A DNA stretch of 64,000 nt from positions 8,246,001 to 8,310,000 of the forward strand of contig NC_087459.1 of the NCBI RefSeq assembly GCF_036321535.1, read 5' to 3'. The notes beneath the pieces were generated by a model, which was not told the origin of the DNA, did no database searches, and was given only the letters and a program-made list of their open reading frames with translations. Of this stretch, positions 5,701-64,000 are shown piece by piece; within the stretch, counting starts at the first letter, position 1, and every line of letters begins with the position of its first letter. This stretch comes from Camelus dromedarius. Lineage: Eukaryota. The position numbers were made by a program, and so were the translations under genes.

Positions 5701-6629
5701 TTTCATTTCTATCTTACCAATTCTTGAAAATCAATGTGAATTAAATCAATGCCATTTGTTGGGATTCATTTCAGGCAGATGCTGAACCAGTGGTCCCTTT
5801 AACATAACAAATGTGGAACCTTTGCTTTTTTTCTTTTTTTAAATGAAATCAACCCGATTCTTGGATTCCGGCAGTGACCTGATCTCTCAGGCGTGTGCCT
5901 ACAATTTGAATGCAGAAACACCCTCCCTCCCTCTCTACCCACCTGCCCACACTGCATTGTAGATGGAAAGAAAGCTGTAAAGGAGCCTCTGACGCTTGAG
6001 GTCTTATGGGTTCAGCACCCCTGTGAGCACTCAGTAAATATTTGATCATGACGGGAAGGCACCATCAGGACCAGGGAATTAGCCACCAGGAGACAGGCGT
6101 CTCCCCCTAGGCACATAAGCCTGTGCCCAGCACCCCAAGTGCACCACTCTGCCCGCCTAAGATAAAAAACAAAGAACATTTTTCTTTTGGAAATTCACTT
6201 GACCCCCTCACCCCCAGGAAGGAATTACATGATTAAGAATGCAAAAGAAAAGAAAAGATCTTTGATTCTTGTTGTGTTCATTTCTAACAAACCAGCCAGA
6301 ATTGAATTACTTCCTATGTGTGACCCTGGCCTAAAGGACATACAAGAGGGAAGGATTGGATTTAATATGTTAATTTGCTTTGCATTTAATTAAAGCAACC
6401 TCAGGCTATGAAAGTTACCAAAACTAAAGAGTACGTCATGAAAGAGTGTTTACCTAGTAATCTGTCTTGCACTTTGGGATTGGTAATGCTGGCTTCCGTT
6501 GTCTTAATTTTTTTTTTTTTTACTGCACGTGTTTTTTTAATTTACATATATGTACTGTTCATTGTTTCTGAGAACATTTAGAGCTTTAGCTTTTTAAACT
6601 TACATAGTTATCAAAGGAATAAAGCCAAC

Positions 6630-6859: not shown

Positions 6860-7209
6860 GTAAACATTTCCATTGTATCAAAAACAACAAAATACCTAGA
6901 AATAAACTTAGCCAAGGAGGTTACCTATACTCTGAAAACTGTAAAGCATTGATGAAGGAAATCGAAGATGATAACAAAGAAATGGAAAGATATCTTGTGC
7001 TCTTAGATTGGAAGAATCAATATCAAAAGAAACACCCTCCCTCCCTCTCTACCCACCTGCCCACACTGCATGGGCACACTACCAAAGCAGTCTACAGATC
7101 CAATGCAACCCCTGTCAAAATAGTCATGACATTTTTCATAGAACTAGAACAAACAATTCCAAAATTTATATGGAACCATAAAAGACCCTAAACTGCCAAA
7201 GCAATCTTT
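6860..7209 (+). mobile_element. L1 ORF2 internal fragment (post-RT region) with a 44-bp insertion
   Basis: aaatacctagaaataaactta...ggaagaatcaatatc...caaagcagtctacagatccaatgcaa...aaaatttatatggaacc...gccaaagcaatctt. Confidence 0.85.
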
Positions 7210-12439: not shown

Positions 12440-41612
<29,173 letters not shown>

Positions 41613-43061
41613 GGCTGCGGCCTCCGGCACCCCGCCCCGCCCAATGCCTGCCACCTGTACATACAGCCCTGCCCACCCGCCCACCACCCGCCCTGCAGGC
41701 AGACAGGCGCCCGTCCACCCCTCTTCTAACCTCTCAACCTGCAGCTTTCACCTTAGGTCCTGGCCTCCCTTCGAGCTGGCAGAGAGCAGCGATGCGGGGC
41801 TGGCTGGGAGGGAGGCAGGGGAGTGGGGTCATTCTGACCAGGCAGGGGTAGCACCTCTTGGAACACCTTTTCCCTAGCAGCTGCTGGCTGGCACTCAGCC
41901 CACAGTCCTCAAGGCCCCAGGGCACTTCAGGGCCAGAGCATGGCTGAACCCCGAGGTGGGTCAGGCCAGGAGAAGCCCCTACAGGTGGCTCCCAGCTCCA
42001 CCCTGGGCTCCCCACTCCCGTCACTCACTCCCAGGAACCCCCTGAGGGGGAAGCAGGGACTTCACTCCGCCGAGTCTTCCCACCCTGAGCCCACTTGCCT
42101 TTGCCTGCTGCCCACCAGCGTGGGGGTCCAACCCTCAGGGAACTGGCCGTCTCTAGCCTTCCCTGGACTCCCCCTACCCCAATCCCTGCCGCCCTGGGAA
42201 CTGGCATGAAAGCACGTAACCAGGCTCCCTGGGGCACCTGCTTGAGAAAATGGACAGATGCCCTCACTTGCTCGAGTCCCATGATCGTCCTGTGTGGCAG
42301 TTTCTCACTGGCCCTCACTGACCCATGTCCTCCCCCTGCCCTCCCTCCCCTGCCTGGGCAAAGACCAACCATGTAGGAGCAGGCCCTCCAGTCAACTGCT
42401 CCCAGAAGTCTCTAGGATGGAATTTCTTAGGCTGCCAGGGCAGGCCTAAGCCTCAGGAAGAAGGAGAGGCTCCTGGCCTCTCCTGGGGTCAGCCCTTGGA
42501 TGCAGGCTCAGTCTCAGGGTGATGGGGAAAGGTGTGCTCCAGGCCTGCCCCTGTGCAGTCTCCAAGGAGCCCAGCTCCCAAGACACGCTACTAAGTGCCT
42601 AGGGCTGGCGGTGTGGCCTGCTCTCCTGAGGGCAACTGACGACAGGCTGCAGAGGTCCGAAGGGCGGAGGACAGGAGCCGCTTCCAGCCGGCTTTGAGGG
42701 GCACCGCCCTGGACTGCCACTACCCCCCAACCTGCCCAGGCCTTATTCCTGTTCCTCGAGGCACAGATCAGGGCAGCCCCAGGTCCTGCTGCCCATCCCT
42801 CCCACCAGAGAAGCACAGATCTTGGGCAGCCATCCTACAAGCCCAGCCGGCCACCGCCGCCACGTGCAGCTGCAGGCTTCTCCCTACCACCCCGCCACTC
42901 TCCACTGTGATGTATGTCAAGTCCCCTGTCTATTCTCACAGGGCTGTGAAGTGACTCGGGGGGGGGGGTCACCAGGGGGGTGCAGCTAGGGGAAGGGGCT
43001 GGGTGATGATTCTCCTCAGGCTTTGGCCCTGCAAGTGAACCTACGTATCTGCTCTGTATGT

Positions 43062-43067
43062 AATAAA
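43062..43067 (+). terminator. MAPK8IP3: AATAAA polyadenylation signal of MAPK8IP3
   Basis: tgtatgtAATAAAtgtc, with upstream TGTA and downstream U/GU-rich sequence, about 1.45 kb after the stop. Confidence 0.8.
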
Positions 43068-43132
43068 TGTCTTAATACCATACTTCTGTGTCCCTGGGCC
43101 CAAGCCAACTCGAACACAAAGATTTTCTTCAG

Positions 43133-43138
43133 TTTATT
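43133..43138 (-). terminator. NME3: AATAAA polyadenylation signal of NME3
   Basis: TTTATT on the plus strand, about 290 nt past the NME3 stop. Confidence 0.75.
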
Positions 43139-43428
43139 ATAAAAAGAAACCCTGGGGCCAGCCAAGCGCCAGGATAGCGCCCTGCCCCGTTTCCAAGAGG
43201 ACTGAACAGGGGCACAGCCTGGGGCTCCCGCAGGGAGGCCTGCAGCAGCCAGGGCTGGGCAGGCGTGCACCTGTCTGTCCTCCTCTAGGTCCTCAAGGCT
43301 GCTGTGCTCCCCACCACAGGAAGGGTGTTCTGAGCTCTTGGGGGTGGGGGCGCCCACGTGTGTGCACACCTCCGGGGCCTGGAGATCCACGTCAGAAGGG
43401 GGCATCTGCCCGAGAGGCTGCAACCCGC

Positions 43429-44285
43429 CTACTCGTACAGCCAGTGCCCGGCGCTGTCCTCCCAGCACAGGAGCTCATCCGTGCGGAACCAGAGTGCGAT
43501 CTCGCGGCGGGCGCTCTCCACTGAGTTGCTACCATGAATCACATTCCTGCGCCGAAGAGGCGCGCGTGAGCGTGGGCGGTAGGGTGGACAGGGGCCCCAT
43601 ACAGCCCAGCTGGGGGAGTCGGGAGCAGCCTTACTTGCCGACCTCGATGCAGAAATCGCCGCGAATGGTGCCGGGTGGGGCGTCAGCCGGGTTTGTGGCC
43701 CCAATGAGCGCCCGTGAAGCCCGCACAACGTCCAGACCCTGCCACACCTGCAGACGGGGTCGGGAGCGCGAAGTCAGCCCAAGGTCCGCGCGCCTCCGCC
43801 CACCCGACCGCGGGCACTCACCATGGCCACCACCGGCCCCGAGCTCATGTACTTGACCAGGCGCCCGTAGAAAGGGCGCTCGCGCAGCTCCGCGTAGTGC
43901 TCGCGTAGCAGCTCCTCGGAGGCCTGGGGAGGGGAACGGGCCAGGTGCACCAGGAATCCGTGTCCCCAGCACCCGGTGACCCCACCCTCTCTGCCCGCCC
44001 CCCGCGCCCGGGAACCCCGCCCTCACCTGCACCAGCTTCAGCGCCACCAGCTTGAAGCCCTTCCTCTCAAAGCGCCGCACGACCTCGCCCACGAGCCTCC
44101 GCTGCACGCCGTCTGGCTTCACGGCCAGGAAGGTGCGCTCGTGCACGCCGGTACAGGCTGCGGGGACCGGCGGGGTCGGGCGCGTCAAGCTCGGCCGTAC
44201 CCTCTCCCCGCCCGGCCTGACCCGGCCCGCGCTGCTCACCTGCCGGGAAGAGGTTGGCGAAGACGGTCAGCAGCAGGCAGATCAT
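43429..44285 (-). CDS. NME3: Nucleoside diphosphate kinase 3 (169 aa)
   Basis: Exons 44285-44240, 44157-44027, 43923-43822, 43747-43635, 43546-43429 = 510 nt; [49 protein letters not shown] (His135), WLYE*. Confidence 0.98.
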
Positions 44286-44600
44286 GATGGCGGCGGGGCG
44301 CGGGCTGGGGCGGGGGCTGGGGTGGTGCGCAGGCCGGGGCGGGGCCTGTGTTTAAAGCTGCGGGGTAGCCTGGCGCCGCTGCCTGGGTGGAACTCAGCGG
44401 GGGACGCGGAGAGGCGGTGCCAGTCGTTCATGCCCATGCCTCGACTCTGCGGCCGCTAATCCCCTCCGATCTCCCCACGCACCTGGCGCCTGCGCTACAC
44501 TCCTCGCAGCACCGGGCTGTGAGCACTGGTGTCGGCCTGCTTGTCCTTACAACCCTGCAAACAGCCCGCTACGGTCGCCCAACCCCAAACTCAAAAAAAC
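43450..44600. promoter_or_regulatory. CpG island / NME3 promoter
   Basis: CpG-dense; GC boxes (GGGGCGGGG) about 44307-44344; TTTAAA at 44351-44356 just upstream of the NME3 ATG. Confidence 0.7.
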
Positions 44601-44626
44601 CACATCCCAGGGCTACTTCATGTGCT

Positions 44627-44632
44627 TTTATT
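44627..44632 (-). terminator. MRPS34: AATAAA polyadenylation signal of MRPS34
   Basis: TTTATT on the plus strand, about 320 nt past the MRPS34 stop. Confidence 0.7.
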
Positions 44633-44950
44633 CGTGTTCACAGCTTCTGCCTGGGTCCCTACAGAGGACACACGTCACAGACAAGGGAGCCAACGCGGAA
44701 GTGTCACGTGCCAACACTGGGGCTCCACACCTGCTTGCCCCTCTCAAGTCAGATAGGCGTGTTCGAGCAGCTGGGACAGAGGAAAGACACAAGGTGCAGG
44801 GTCTGCTCCCACCCTTTTCCTCCAAAATGTAGAACCTAAGAACAAGTCACTGGAAGGTCGGATCCAGGCTCCCAGGGGCCTGATTCAAGTGTAACCCAAA
44901 CTGGTGCCCACTGTCTTACACCCTTCTGGGAGCCTGCCGAGTCTGGTATT

Positions 44951-45857
44951 TTAGACGGCTGTGCCCTTGGTCTTTCTCTTCGCCTCCAGTTTCTCAGGAT
45001 AGTCCCAGGGATCAATGCGCGACCTCTCCAGACTCAGCATGGGCTCTTCCGTGCTGGTGTCTCCATTTTTCTGTCTCTCAGCTAGAATAATAGCCCGGAG
45101 GAGCGGCGGGTAGGGCACAGAGTGAAGAGTGTCCTCCGGCAACGGTGTGAAAGTGGTGAAGGCTTCCTCCTCGTGCTTGGGCACCACCCTCCAGTCGTGG
45201 TGCATGACCTGTTCTATCTCCCGAGCCTCACTCTCCGTCTTTCCTGGGGAAAAAAGGACGAGGCTTACTGCACACACGCTGGCCGAACAGTCTGTTGCCG
45301 GCAGCCAGCCTACCTTGTCTCCAACACAGCCTTACCTTTGAAGGTCAAGATGCCCCAGGCCTTCCCGTGGTCCAAGTTCTGCAAAGCAAGTGGGGAGGAG
45401 AATCAGTTCAGAAAGCTCGCTTGTCCAGGGATCGGGAGACAGGTGACCCCATCCCACAAAGTCCCGCGCAGGGAAGGCAGAGGTGCCCAGCGTTGCGGGG
45501 GCGGGGCGATGGGGACGGTGTCGACGGTGCGCGCACCTCCGCTGTGTAGTCAGGCCGAACCCGCGTGAGGCGCCAGTAGCATGGCTCGTCGTGCTGCCAC
45601 AGCCAGGACTTGCGCGTGACGAGGCGGCCCAGGCCGAAGAGCGGGAGGCGGCTGAGCAGCTGCAGAAGGCGGTTCTCGTGTTGCACATCGATCCAGGCTC
45701 GCATGGGCAGCCGGCGGCCCGTGTACGGCCGCGTCAGCGTCTCGTAGTCCAGGGCATAGCGCTGCGAGTCGCGCGGCCGGTTCCGTTGCTCGCGCAGGGC
45801 CCGCACGCGGCGGGCCAGCTCGGCGATCAGCCGCGGCCTCACCTTCTTCCGCGCCAT
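44951..45857 (-). CDS. MRPS34: Mitochondrial small ribosomal subunit protein mS34 (218 aa)
   Basis: Exons 45857-45537, 45378-45336, 45243-44951 = 657 nt; [66 protein letters not shown]. Confidence 0.98.
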
Positions 45858-45977
45858 GCCGCTGCGGCCGGAAGCCGTCGCCGCGCGCCGCTAGGCCCGT
45901 CCGATGCCGGAAGCGGCGGGTGTCCCCCGCAAAGGTGTCCGGGCGCAGCCGGAAGCCGAGAAGAGGCCGGGCGGGCC
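45858..45977. promoter_or_regulatory. Bidirectional CpG-island promoter MRPS34/EME2
   Basis: Divergent ATGs only 120 bp apart; CCGGAAG ETS/GABP-type motifs at 45868, 45907 and 45949. Confidence 0.85.
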
Positions 45978-48900
45978 ATGGAGAGGGCTGAGTCTGGGAG
46001 GGCCGGGGGTTCGCGCCAGGGCCGGGTTCAGCGGCGGCCCCCGACCTGGGAGATCTCGGACTCGGACAGTGAGGGTCCCGCCGGCGTGGAGGCCGCCGTG
46101 AGAGTCCCGGACTCGGCGGATGAGCGCCGGGCGGCGGCCGAGACTCCGCGGCGACTGCGGCCGGAGCAGGCCTTGCGGCGCCTGGCGGTGCTCGTCGACC
46201 CAGGTGCGGGCGGGCGCAGAGAGTAGCCCGGGGTGGGGAGCCTGGAAGTTCCCCTTAATCCCAGGAGATTATCGTCGGCCCGACTGCAGGTGGGTGAGGC
46301 ATCTCTCAGGGCCCCCTGTTGGCCAGGAACTGGCACCGGCTTCCCCGCTGGGAAGATTGTTTAGACTCAGTCGTGCGCTGTGGGAGCCGGTCCGGAATGT
46401 GTCTTGGTAACACATGCTGACCAGGCTGTGCGTCTGCTGTCCCTATCCAAGTAGTGTCTTCGCGTGGGGGAAGGAAGGAGTGACAGCTGACTCCCTCTGC
46501 CCCCTCTCAGCCATCCTGGAAGATGCTGGTGCGGATATCCTGATTGAGGCCCTGGACACCTTGGGCTGTGAGTACCGTGTGGAGCCCCAGCGCCCTGCCA
46601 GAAGTCTCAGGTGGAGCAGAGTGAAGCCAGACCCTTGCCCCAACGGTGTGAGTGTCCTAGGTTAAGTGTTTTATAGCCATGAAGTTAATCTTGAAAGGCA
46701 CCTGCTGCAGTCGTGCATGTTTTACAGACCAGTAAACTAAGAATGGGGAATGCCGAGTGGGTGATAGTTGTGGGCTGAACGCAGCTGCTGCTGAGGGCTG
46801 TTCCATCCCCATCAGGGCTGTGGCCAAAAGTTTTGCCTCGAGGACCTGGGCTGGTGTTAGTCTCAGCAGGAGATGGGATGTTGGACTTCTGTAGAGCAGC
46901 ACTGGAAGAAACTGCGAGTGGCAGTAACCACGAGCCTCAGAACTTCTGGGGTGTCCAGGTCGAGACCCTGGGATGCACGAGGCCAAGGGTGGGCAGCAGT
47001 GCCCCGGATGTCCCCACAGGTGCCTCCTGAGGTGTGGGCTGCAGATGAGCAGGACCTGCTGCTGCTGCTGGAGCCTGAGGAGTTTCTTCAGGGTGTGATC
47101 CAGCTGACCCAGGTGCTGGGGGAAGGGTGAGGGGGCAGTAATCCTCGTCCACAAATCGTGAGGGACTGGGTTTCCTATCTTGGATGTTCTGGGTGAGATG
47201 TAGGAAGGCAGCACGACTCTTGGCCTGGGAGCAGATGGGAGCCGCAGCTACTTCTAGAGGGCAGAGCCAGGATAACGAGAGTTCTCTGGGGAGCTGAGTC
47301 AGAAGTCAGAGGCAGTAAGCTGCCAAGGTGGGGGTGAAGACCAGAGCTGCAGACTGGCTGTGCAATCCACCTTGTGACCCCCAACAGCCCAGCCTGTCTG
47401 GCTAGAGGAGAAATAGGGACTGTTCAGCTGATTTTTGCACCAGAGTATTATTAGACCCTCTGCCAGTTCCCAGATTAAGCACCTGCTGTGCGCCAGGCTG
47501 GCGTGTGTGCAGAGGTGGACCGACAATGGCGAGGGGGATTCAGTCCGTCTCTTGCAGGAGCACAGGACGTGCCCGGGGCCTTATGTGGATCTCCGCCCCA
47601 CCCCTGCCACTGCCCTTGATCTCAGGAAAGGCACAAAGCCGGTTCTCTAAAGCGAACTGGCTGGGCAGGGACATCCACTCCTGCCTCCAAGCACCACAGG
47701 GTCGTTCTCAGTCTCGTTCCCCTTCTTTCTGCAAACTGGTCCCAAAGGACATGTGTGGTAAACCTTGGCTTGCAGATCCGTGGCCCAGCCTGTTCGGTGC
47801 CGTGGATCACCCCTGGGAGCCCAGCCTGCCCCCACCTGGCTGTCATTGGTCTGGATGCTTACCTCTGGTACTGGTCACCCTGACACCCTTAGCTGGCCTG
47901 ACTGGGATGGGAGAGTTCAGGGGAACGGCAGGGGTGGCGCTGGAGGCTGGTGTGTCACAGCTAACCCTCTCCCTTGGGTGGCTCTGGGGGAAGCAGAAGA
48001 ACTCAGAGGGTGGGACTGATGGGGTGTGGGGAGCTGGAGTGATGGTCACTTCTGCTTAGGTCTCACCAGCCCAGCACTCGGGAGACACGGCTGCCAGAGA
48101 GTTCAGCCACAGCCTGTGCCCAGGTGGTAGTCGGCTGGCCCGAGGTGGAGGAGGTGAGTGCAGTCAGGTTGGGTCAGGTGGTTGGCCTGGGCCCTAGTGC
48201 TTAGGCTGCTCTTAGACCCAGTGGAGGCTGGTTTGGCATGTGGGTGGCATGTGGCATTGGTCTCAGCTGGGTGTCCCCCAAGGGAGCCCTCCTCTGACCC
48301 ACACCCACGGGCTTACCCCCTCCCTCCTCAGGCCCTGGTGCTCCTGCAGCTCTGGGCAAACATGGATGTGCTACTGGTGGCCTCCTGGCAGGAGCTGAGT
48401 CAGCATGTGTGCACCTTCACCAAGGCCCTTGCCCAGCGCCCCTTCAAGTGCGTGAGCCTCACCCTGCTGGTGGCTGCTGCCAGGAGGGGTGGGGGTATGG
48501 GGCGGGTGCTCAGGAAAGGTGGACGAAGCCTCTAGGAGCCTCCCCGCACCCTCCCCTGTCCAGGCAGGCCCGGGAGTCGGGGCCCTTTTCCTTCTGCACT
48601 GCAGGGCGCTGGGCAGCAGGCGAGCGAGTAGCAGGAGATGGCACAGGGCTGCGGGCGGCCTGGTGGCGGCAGATCCAGCAGTTCAACCGGGTCAGCCCAG
48701 CTGTGGCCGATGCTGTTGTCACCGCCTTCCCCTCCCCCCGCCTTCTGCAACAGGTGCTCCCTCTCCCCCAGTCCCTGGTATGGAGGGTCCCCAAGACCTG
48801 CCCTGCTCATCCCTCTGCCTGCCCTAGGCTTACGTCGCCTGTGGCTCGGAGCAGGAGCGCCTGGCCCTCCTGACTGACCTCCCAGTGAAGATGGGTGAGG

Positions 48901-62254: not shown

Positions 62255-64000
62255 TCAGCAGCGAGCAAAGTGGTCTTCGCTGATGTCACGCAGGTCGAGG
62301 CCTGAGACGCTGGCGGGGCTGGCACAGGTGATGTTGTTGTAGGTGTAGGCAGGCGGCTGGCGGTCATCGTCCCCCTCCGCCATGGCCCGGACAAAGCGGG
62401 GCACGATGCTGGGGTGCTGCAGGGCCAAGGCCCTCAGGGCCTTGAGGGGGCAGCCGCAGTCCCAGGGGTTGCCCTCAAGCCACAGGCGCTCCAGGCCAGG
62501 TGGCTCGGGCACAAAGGTCCGCAGCGAGTTGTTCCGGAGGCTGAGGTAGCGCAGCCGCCCCAGGGGGGAGAGCACGCCCTCAGGCAGCGCCTCCAGGCGG
62601 TTGTGGGAGACGTCCAGCCAGAAGGTGCGCTGCAGGGGCCCCAGGACTTCCGCCGAGAGCGCCGACAGCCGGTTCCGGGAGAGGAGGAGATACTCCAGCT
62701 TGCCGAGGCCCTGGAAGAGCCGGGCGGGCAGGTGTGTGAGCTGGTTGGAGGTGAGGTCCAGCTCGAGGAGCTCGGCTAGCCCCACCAGGCTCTGCTCGTC
62801 AATGGCCGTGATGCTGTTGTCCTTGAGGAAGAGCCGGCGCAGCCCTGAGAGGCCGGCGAAGGTGTGCAGGCCGACTCGGCCCAGGCAGCTGCCCTCCAGG
62901 TGCAGGCTGTGCAGCTTGCCCAGGCCCTGGAACACCTGCTCCGGAAGGTTCCGCAGGCAGTTGCGAGAGAGGTTCATGACAGCCACATTGAAGAGGCCCA
63001 GGAAGGCGCCCACCTTAATCTCTTGGATTTGGTTGTTGTTGAGCCCGAGCACCTCCAGCTGGGCCAGGCCCTCGAACACCTTCTCGGGCAACTGCCGGAT
63101 GCGGTTGTAGCCCAGCTGCAGCTCCTCCAGGAAGTGCAGGTCTTTGAAGGTTCGGGGCCGCAAGCCCGCGAGGGCATTGTGGGAGAGGCGCAGGACGTGC
63201 AGGCCCAGCAGGCCCGGGAAGGTGTCCTCCAGGAGGCTGCCCACACGGTTGTGCGACAGGTCCAGCCAGCGCAGCGCCTTCAGGCCCAGGAAGGCGCCTG
63301 GGGCCACGGCCGCGATGAGGTTGTGGTCCAGGTAGAGCTTCTGGAGTTTGGGCAGCTTGACGAAGACGTTGGCCTTGACGCTCCGCAGGGCGTTCCTGCT
63401 CAGGTCCAGCTCCCGGAGCTCACCGAGGCCGCAGAAGAGTGAGGGCTGCAGGTAGGCCAGCTTGTTGCCCGCCAGCACCAGCTCCCGCAGGTTGGCCAGG
63501 CCCTGGAACGCGGTGTCAGGCAGCACGGCCAGGCTGTTCCAGCCCAGGTTGAGGTCCCAGAGGTGGGCCAGACCCTGGAAGAGGCCCTCGTCCACCCGGC
63601 TTAGCAGGTTGTTGTTGAGGCCGAGCGAGGCCAGGCCCGGTGTGTGCAGGAAGGTGTGGGCCGCCAGGCTGCGCAGCTGGTTCCGCTCCAGGTGCAGATG
63701 GTACAGGTTTGGCAGGCCCAGGAGCGCCTGTGGCTCCAGGCTGGCCAGCTGGCTGCCCTGAAGGTTGAGGAAGCCCAGGCTGGACAGGTTCCGGAAGGCC
63801 GCCGCGGGGACGGAAGAGAAGTTGTTGCCATCCAGCCACAGGGCCTTGGCGCCCTCTGGGATGCCGTCGGGCAGCTGGGTGAGGTTCCGGGAGCTGCAGA
63901 AGACGCTGAGCTCGTCTGTGTAGTCGTCGTGGCCGCAGACGCAGACTGCCGGGCACTGCAGGCCCTCAGTGTCTGCTGGCACCCCAGGCTCCACTCCCTC
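62255..64000 (-). CDS. IGFALS: IGF-binding protein complex acid-labile subunit (large coding exon; 5'-partial)
   Basis: Uninterrupted LRR ORF (579 aa in the track from a GTG; frame stays open to the window end): [19 protein letters not shown], repeated LxxLxLxxNxL, [25 protein letters not shown]. Confidence 0.98.

What the first reader, a model, noticed from the sequence alone, without database searches (positions are those of the whole stretch)
43525..43536. NME3 active-site signature altered: H-G-S-D becomes H-G-S-N (D138N)
Minus-strand codons read AAT GTG ATT CAT GGT AGC AAC TCA (NVIHGSNS). The NDP-kinase active-site pattern is N-x-x-H-[GA]-S-D, with this Asp essentially invariant (Asp121 in NME1/2 numbering, near the Mg/phosphate site as I recall). 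AGC-GAC to AGC-AAC is a single CpG-type transition at 43527. The rest of the gene is intact, including His135 and the N-terminal membrane anchor. NME3 is known to have separable kinase and mitochondrial-fusion/oligomerisation functions, so this lineage may carry a kinase-impaired but structurally functional NME3.
Basis: partly seen in the sequence, partly recalled or inferred. Interest (0 to 1): 0.72.

Follow-up and report, generated by a model that had tools for sequence, protein, structure and literature searches.

The report
Camel NME3 with Asn in HGSD motif
An otherwise intact and strongly conserved gene for the mitochondrial-surface enzyme NME3 carries Asn instead of the almost invariant Asp next to its catalytic histidine; the change is real in many sequenced animals and seen in no other species I could sample, but its effect on enzyme activity is untested.

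Summary
A complete five-exon NME3 gene (169 aa, minus strand, 44285-43429) reads H135-G136-S137-N138, with codon AAC at 43527-43525.

It is not an assembly error. All four sampled 31-mers that cover base 43527 are held by contigs of 11 DNA samples from 7 studies under three coded organism labels. A Logan contig I could read (L004) is 100% identical to the window over 6.8 kb, including the site.

Asn is unique among the relatives I could sample:
- 116 of 116 vertebrate NME3 cluster representatives that include the motif have Asp, including alpaca (the closest) and bison (codon GAC).
- None of 150 wider NDP-kinase representatives has Asn.

The rest of the gene is under strong constraint. Against bison, exons 4-5 differ at 18 synonymous and 2 non-synonymous codons. 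All other catalytic, hexamer and membrane-binding residues are kept.

In the human NME3-ADP-Mg2+ structure, Asp138 lies near the beta-phosphate and a Mg2+-bound water.

My best reading is a real, common or fixed CpG transition in a camelid lineage. It probably weakens, but does not abolish, phosphotransfer and leaves the non-kinase roles intact.

Not tested: fixation, the state in each Camelus species, and the enzymatic effect.

The parts
43429..44285 (-). NME3 coding region, five exons: 44285-44240, 44157-44027, 43923-43822, 43747-43635 and 43546-43429 (stop at 43431-43429). The product is 169 aa.
   Evidence: Spliced translation is open with GT-AG at all four introns. Exon 5 matches human NME3 structures at E about 2e-20 and Pfam NDK. 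The gene order MAPK8IP3-NME3-MRPS34-EME2 is the same as at the bison locus L001.
43525..43527 (-). Codon AAC for Asn138, in place of the Asp of the H-G-S-D motif. The changed base is 43527 (T on the plus strand).
   Evidence: Bison has GAC. Human has Asp. The site-covering words are held by 11 DNA samples in 7 studies. It was also read directly in contig L004.
43534..43536 (-). Codon CAT for the catalytic His135, which is intact.
44240..44285 (-). Exon 1, which encodes the N-terminal hydrophobic/amphipathic membrane anchor, with F9 and F13 kept.
   Evidence: F9 and F13 are needed for phosphatidic-acid binding in human NME3 (PMC10432850).
43133..43138 (-). AATAAA polyadenylation signal, 290 nt after the stop codon.
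44286..44700 (-). CpG-island-like promoter and 5' region. Over 44700-44100, GC is 0.68 and CpG observed/expected is 0.83.
45411..45857 (-). Exon 1 of the neighbouring gene MRPS34, read as an ORF that runs on into the intron. It serves as the synteny anchor.
   Evidence: Its homologues are named mS34/MRPS34. Logan contigs L002 and L003 are 100% identical to the window here.

Best explanation
This is the functional NME3 (NDP kinase C) orthologue of a camelid, probably a Camelus species. A single CpG transition has replaced Asp138, the Asp of the H-G-S-D active-site motif, with Asn.

Shown:
- The substitution is real germline sequence present in many animals.
- It is unique among the sampled orthologues.
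- It sits in a complete gene that is otherwise under strong purifying selection.
- Every other catalytic residue, the hexamer-interface glutamates and the lipid-binding N-terminus are kept.

From published structures: in human NME3 bound to ADP-Mg2+, Asp138 lines the pocket next to the beta-phosphate and contacts one of the waters bound to Mg2+. It is an outer-shell metal ligand, not the nucleophile.

Inferred: Asn keeps the shape and a hydrogen bond but loses the negative charge. The likely effect is therefore quantitative: slower phosphotransfer and/or weaker or altered Mg2+ dependence. His135 can probably still be phosphorylated. The kinase-independent roles (hexamer formation, phosphatidic-acid binding, mitochondrial tethering) should be untouched.

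The change was probably tolerated because NME1 and NME2 supply most cellular NDP-kinase activity, and it may have been fixed by drift in a lineage of small population size.
For: Gene anatomy and codon.

Reality of the base:
- all four sampled words, each covering 43527, are held at share 1.00 in samples S1-S3 and S17-S24, from 7 studies, under organism labels A, B and D.
- the 3-kb haplotype is held at share 1.00 in 8 samples from 6 studies.
- contig L004 is 100% identical to the window over 6,772 bp, including the site.

Uniqueness:
- 116 of 116 vertebrate NME3 cluster representatives with the motif have His...Asp.
- of 150 representatives at 50% identity, 146 have Asp, 2 Ser, 1 Glu and none Asn.
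- six further exon-5 products all have Asp.
- The nearest relative, alpaca P0151, has Asp. Bison has codon GAC.

Constraint:
- Exons 4-5 differ from bison at 18 synonymous and 2 non-synonymous codons.
- F9, F13, K29, E40, E46, Y69, F77, R105, T111, R122, V129, N132, H135, G136, S137 and E146 are all kept.

[quoted passage not shown] It also shows that Mg2+ is needed for 1-pHis formation.

Separable functions: PMC10432850 and PMC10938004.
Against: - No kinetic data exist for Asp-to-Asn at this position in any NDP kinase that I could find. 'Impaired' is therefore an inference.
- Asn can still hydrogen-bond the water, so activity might be near normal.
- Fixation is not shown. The run search lists only holders of the window's allele, and I could not lay reads.
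- Expression of this allele is only suggested. RNA-run contigs hold 54-64% of the words of the 3-kb stretch. Small runs guessed to be RNA hold 2 of the 4 site words.
- The organism labels are coded, so I cannot say which species share the change.
- 'Camel' rests on other agents' unchecked notes and on alpaca being the nearest NME3.
Confidence: 0.55

Rival explanations
1. The substitution is functionally near-neutral. Asn138 replaces Asp138 adequately as a hydrogen-bond partner of the Mg2+-bound water, so camel NME3 has essentially normal NDP-kinase activity.
For: - The residue is an outer-shell ligand and does not touch Mg2+ directly (PMC11431768).
- Asp to Asn is isosteric.
- The gene is otherwise under strong constraint, which suggests the enzyme still matters.
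- One natural NDP kinase has Glu here, and two align with Ser, one of them with an Asp one residue on. The position is therefore not absolutely fixed.
Against: - Asp is kept in 116 of 116 NME3 representatives and 146 of 150 wider representatives. It is never Asn, even though Asn is one CpG transition away in species with AGC GAC. That pattern argues that Asn is normally selected against.
- NM23-H2 D121A loses ligand and DNA binding in the same pocket (PMC4538829).
Confidence: 0.3
2. It is a segregating, mildly deleterious allele, carried by the reference animal and many others, rather than a fixed lineage change.
For: The run search finds only holders of the window's allele, so animals with the ancestral allele would not appear. 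CpG sites mutate fast. Camels have low diversity, so a drifting allele can become common.
Against: Sixteen DNA samples from 11 studies and three organism labels hold it. No contig with the other allele turned up.
Confidence: 0.12
3. It is an assembly or sequencing error, or the gene is an early pseudogene.
For: None beyond prior odds for a single-base oddity.
Against: - Independent runs and a directly read contig carry the base.
- The frame is open, the splice sites are canonical, and a polyA signal and CpG-island promoter are present.
- Exons 4-5 show 18 synonymous against 2 non-synonymous codon differences from bison.
Confidence: 0.02
4. A-to-I RNA editing of the first A of AAC restores an Asp codon in the transcript.
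For: Inosine at that base would read as GAC. This is an idea only.
Against: The 241-nt region around the site folds no better than shuffled sequence: z = +1.16, and 179 of 200 shuffles fold at least as well. The 5' neighbour is C, which ADAR enzymes use poorly (general knowledge).
Confidence: 0.01

Closest known systems
Human NME3 / NDP kinase C (PDB 1zs6, 8qvy-8qw3)
   Same: Same length (169 aa) and the same exon-5 sequence apart from three residues. The whole protein is about 95% identical to the human/ape cluster representative P0152. The catalytic residues, hexamer-interface residues and N-terminal anchor residues are the same.
   Different: Asn138 replaces Asp138, the residue that lies by the beta-phosphate and a Mg2+-bound water in 8qw1 (PMC11431768).
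Alpaca (Vicugna pacos) NME3, P0151
   Same: It is the closest sequence found. From residue 60 to the end only two residues differ. It shares V133 and T154 with the window.
   Different: Alpaca has Asp138 and Val127. If the window is Camelus, the change arose after the split from the llama/alpaca branch.
Engineered NME3 separation-of-function mutants H135Q and E40/46D
   Same: They show that the NME3 roles can be uncoupled. H135Q is kinase-dead yet still tethers mitochondria. E40/46D lacks NDP-kinase turnover yet keeps phospho-His and restores mitophagy (PMC10432850, PMC10938004).
   Different: The natural change hits neither the nucleophile nor the hexamer interface. Its effect on each step is unknown.
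Divergent NDK domains of multi-domain (group II-like) NDP-kinase proteins
   Same: These are natural NDK folds that depart from the H-G-S-D signature. Examples are the HGSS and HGSE repeats in P0025, P0026 and P0032.
   Different: Those are old, divergent paralogues with many changes. Here a single residue differs in an otherwise canonical group I enzyme, and the replacement (Asn) was not seen in any of them.

Membership tests
NME3 orthologue (group I NDP kinase, Pfam NDK PF00334) | Sequence match to the NDK domain and to NME3 in particular | tested here: met
   Exon 5 matches human NME3 structures at E about 2e-20 and PF00334 at 27.9 bits against a cutoff of 27. The whole protein is 94.7% identical to P0152.
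NME3 orthologue (group I NDP kinase, Pfam NDK PF00334) | Conserved gene neighbourhood (MAPK8IP3 - NME3 - MRPS34 - EME2) | tested here: met
   Bison locus L001 has the same genes in the same order and aligns along its length with window 40.4-48.2 kb. MRPS34 exon 1 was identified.
NME3 orthologue (group I NDP kinase, Pfam NDK PF00334) | Catalytic histidine and nucleotide-binding residues (K29, Y69, F77, R105, T111, R122, N132, H135, S137, E146) | tested here: met
   All are present. The residue list comes from PMC11431768 and from general knowledge of NDP kinases.
NME3 orthologue (group I NDP kinase, Pfam NDK PF00334) | NDP-kinase active-site signature N-x-x-H-[GA]-S-D (PROSITE pattern, recalled from memory) | tested here: not met
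   The window reads N-V-I-H-G-S-N. The final Asp is Asn. Every other position of the pattern is met.
NME3 orthologue (group I NDP kinase, Pfam NDK PF00334) | NME3-specific N-terminal membrane anchor with F9 and F13, and hexamer-interface residues E40 and E46 | tested here: met
   The roles of these residues are given in PMC10432850.
NME3 orthologue (group I NDP kinase, Pfam NDK PF00334) | NDP-kinase activity and 1-phospho-His135 formation | not testable with these tools
   This needs recombinant protein assays.

The most novel reading that the evidence does not exclude
Old World camels carry a naturally fixed separation-of-function NME3. NDP-kinase turnover is strongly reduced by loss of the charged outer-shell Mg2+ ligand. 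His135 phosphorylation, hexamer formation and phosphatidic-acid-dependent mitochondrial tethering are kept. A whole large-mammal lineage would then show which NME3 activities are dispensable in vivo. The change might even be an adaptive retuning of mitochondrial quality control under starvation or dehydration.
Probability: 0.2. Interest if true: 0.65.

Novelty: new variant of a known kind. Interest (0 to 1): 0.45.

Why it matters
NME3 has at least three separable activities: NDP-kinase turnover, a phospho-His135-dependent role in hypoxia mitophagy, and catalysis-independent mitochondrial tethering. These have been dissected only with engineered mutants in cells and mice.

A natural, widespread substitution at an otherwise invariant active-site residue, in a gene that is otherwise tightly conserved, offers a ready-made test. 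It would show how much NDP-kinase chemistry NME3 needs in a whole animal. It would also show what the HGSD aspartate contributes, and I found no mutational enzymology for that residue.

If activity turns out to be normal, that is a useful correction to the assumption that this Asp is essential.

I found no paper that mentions the variant.

Tried and rejected
- **Raw-read check.** I instead used the second run search on a 61-nt stretch centred on the site.
- **Cluster members.** I could not open the 90% clusters (P0152, P0151) that probably hold the Camelus proteins.
- **Full-length protein searches.** A spliced protein has no reference, so I did not query with the window's full-length NME3. 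I used exon 5, the bison fragment P0002 and an exon-5 ORF instead.
- **Exon-5 ORF look-up.** The exact look-up of the exon-5 ORF found nothing on record. The ORF starts at TTG, so the reference translation cannot match a called product.
- **Metagenome scans.** Two scans found nothing: one for the camel exon-5 sequence with either allele, and one for an Asn-allele pattern with degenerate synonymous sites.
- **Species identification by SINEs.** Repeat searches and self-BLAST found almost no repeated DNA in the window.
- **MRPS34 homologues.** They did not resolve the species. The best identity was 93%, in an unnamed Logan product.
- **RNA editing.** No stable structure surrounds the site, so I rejected this idea.
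- **Literature.** I found no kinetics for an Asp mutant of the HGSD motif. The only result was that NM23-H2 D121A loses DNA and ligand binding.
- **Assembly error and pseudogene.** Both are rejected.

Full report
**What is there**

Five exons joined by GT-AG introns give an open 169-codon frame: 44285-44240, 44157-44027, 43923-43822, 43747-43635 and 43546-43429. His135 is at 43536-43534 and Asn138 at 43527-43525.

An AATAAA signal lies 290 nt after the stop codon, and the 5' region has CpG-island composition.

Exon 5 matches the two human NME3 crystal-structure sequences end to end (E about 2e-20). It differs only at L133V, D138N and A154T. It also matches Pfam NDK.

The neighbouring genes are those expected for NME3:
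- MRPS34 lies immediately upstream on the same strand.
- EME2 lies beyond MRPS34, and MAPK8IP3 is on the other side, as at the bison locus L001.
- IGFALS-like leucine-rich repeats lie at 62-64 kb.

**Is the base real?**

I could not lay reads. 

Three other lines of evidence show the base is real.

1. The 3-kb stretch 42500-45500 is held at share 1.00 (301 sampled words) by contigs of 8 DNA samples from 6 studies, under two coded organism labels.
2. I searched a 61-nt stretch centred on 43527, so that every 31-mer in it covers the site. All four sampled words are held by 11 DNA samples from 7 studies, under three organism labels (A, B, D). Five small runs guessed to be RNA hold two of the four words, as spliced transcripts would. 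Together, searches give 16 DNA samples from 11 studies.
3. An exact look-up of a neighbouring ORF returned a Logan contig from run SRR36380800. It is 100% identical to window 39428-46199, so it includes all of NME3 and the site. Three more contigs from sister runs are 100% identical over MRPS34 and over the stretch between NME3 and MAPK8IP3, but none of them reaches the site.

These searches list only holders of the window's allele. They show the allele is widespread, not that it is fixed.

**Is Asn found elsewhere?**

No.

- A search of 1.84 billion representatives with exon 5 gave 150 best hits. At the aligned position 146 have Asp, 2 Ser and 1 Glu; one lacks the region; none has Asn. One of the Ser cases reads H-S-S-S-D and may simply be shifted by one residue.
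- A search at 90% clustering, seeded with the bison fragment, listed 120 proteins, nearly all named NME3, from mammals to sharks. Of its 117 newly listed proteins, 116 have His...Asp; the one exception is a predicted Acomys isoform that lacks the His segment.
- Six further exon-5 read-through products all have Asp.

The closest sequence is alpaca NME3 (P0151). From residue 60 onward it differs only at I127V and N138D.

Bison has AGC GAC where the window has AGC AAC, so the change is a CpG transition.

Non-coding identity to bison is only 67-80%, so the window is not from a bovid.

Other agents of this scan call this genome a camel (unchecked notes). The alpaca affinity fits that. If so, the change arose after the Camelus and llama/alpaca branches split.

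**State of the rest of the gene**

Between the window and bison, exons 4-5 (76 codons) differ at 18 synonymous and 2 non-synonymous codons: P117T and N138D. That is strong purifying selection.

These residues are all kept: F9, F13, K29, E40, E46, Y69, F77, R105, T111, R122, V129, N132, H135, G136, S137 and E146.

In a 21-sequence mammalian alignment, Asn138 is the only residue of the window's protein that no other sequence shares.

This is a working gene, not a decaying one.

**What the residue does**

The 2024 structures of human NDPK-C show that Asp138 joins the pocket only when Mg2+ is bound. [quoted passage not shown] The same paper shows that Mg2+ is needed for formation of 1-phospho-His135 (PMC11431768).

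In NM23-H2 the equivalent D121A mutant loses binding of DNA and of a small molecule in the same pocket. Its kinase activity was not reported (PMC4538829).

I found no kinetics for any Asp mutant of the HGSD motif.

From general enzymology, neutralising an outer-shell carboxylate of a Mg2+-phosphoryl site usually slows catalysis without abolishing binding. That is an analogy, not a result for this enzyme.

**How it fits NME3 biology**

- Kinase-dead H135Q still clusters and tethers mitochondria. Tethering needs F9/F13 and the E40/E46 hexamer interface (PMC10432850).
- Hypoxia mitophagy needs a phosphorylatable His135 but not NDP-kinase turnover.
- The authors of that study note that NME3 contributes little to NTP pools compared with NME1 and NME2.
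- H135Q knock-in mice are viable and show late ataxia (PMC10938004).

**Verdict**

The functional claim is still inference.

| Reading | Odds |
|---|---|
| Real, common or fixed substitution that weakens phosphotransfer while other roles persist | about 0.55 |
| Near-neutral substitution | 0.30 |
| Merely a common polymorphism | 0.12 |
| Error or pseudogene | 0.02 |
| RNA editing rescue (the region folds no better than shuffles) | 0.01 |

No paper in the searched library links camels and NME3.

**Limits**

- The organism names are coded.
- The 90% clusters could not be opened.
- The window's full spliced protein could not be used as a query.
- The metagenome scans were blank.

Noticed in passing
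Nothing was laid. I worked beside them afterwards.
   Followed up: no
window 43522-43545: Compared with bison, four of the eight codons around the site differ by transitions at CpG or third positions: CAC/CAT, GGC/GGT, GAC/AAC and TCG/TCA. This is a small local cluster of C-to-T and G-to-A changes. Only one of them changes the protein.
   Followed up: partly
window 43522-43527: The new Asn is followed by Ser. From general protein chemistry, Asn-Ser is a deamidation-prone pair, and slow deamidation would yield Asp or isoAsp at position 138. NME3 is reported to be short-lived (PMC10938004), so this probably matters little.
   Followed up: no
window 40747-41199 (+): A 150-aa ATG ORF lies between NME3 and MAPK8IP3. 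It is called as a gene on Logan contigs, and a 109-aa gene with no Pfam hit on record is annotated at the matching place in bison (L001 4539-5047). Whether it is a real gene is unknown.
   Followed up: no
window 1-64000: There is almost no repeated DNA within the 64-kb window. Self-BLAST finds only one 44-bp repeat (5914-5957 and 7028-7071), and the repeat tools find nothing. That is unusual for mammalian sequence, where several copies of young SINEs would be expected.
   Followed up: partly
P0256 (Acomys russatus NME3 isoform X2): This predicted isoform lacks the K-N-V-I-H-G-S segment, including the catalytic His. It is probably an annotation artefact of an alternative acceptor site.
   Followed up: no
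window 62258-63994 (-) and 14875-22715: IGFALS-like leucine-rich-repeat ORF. The scan's index also lists first-reader notes on my window about IGFALS cysteines (at 62357-62383) and about JIP3 (at 14875-22715). I assessed neither.
   Followed up: no
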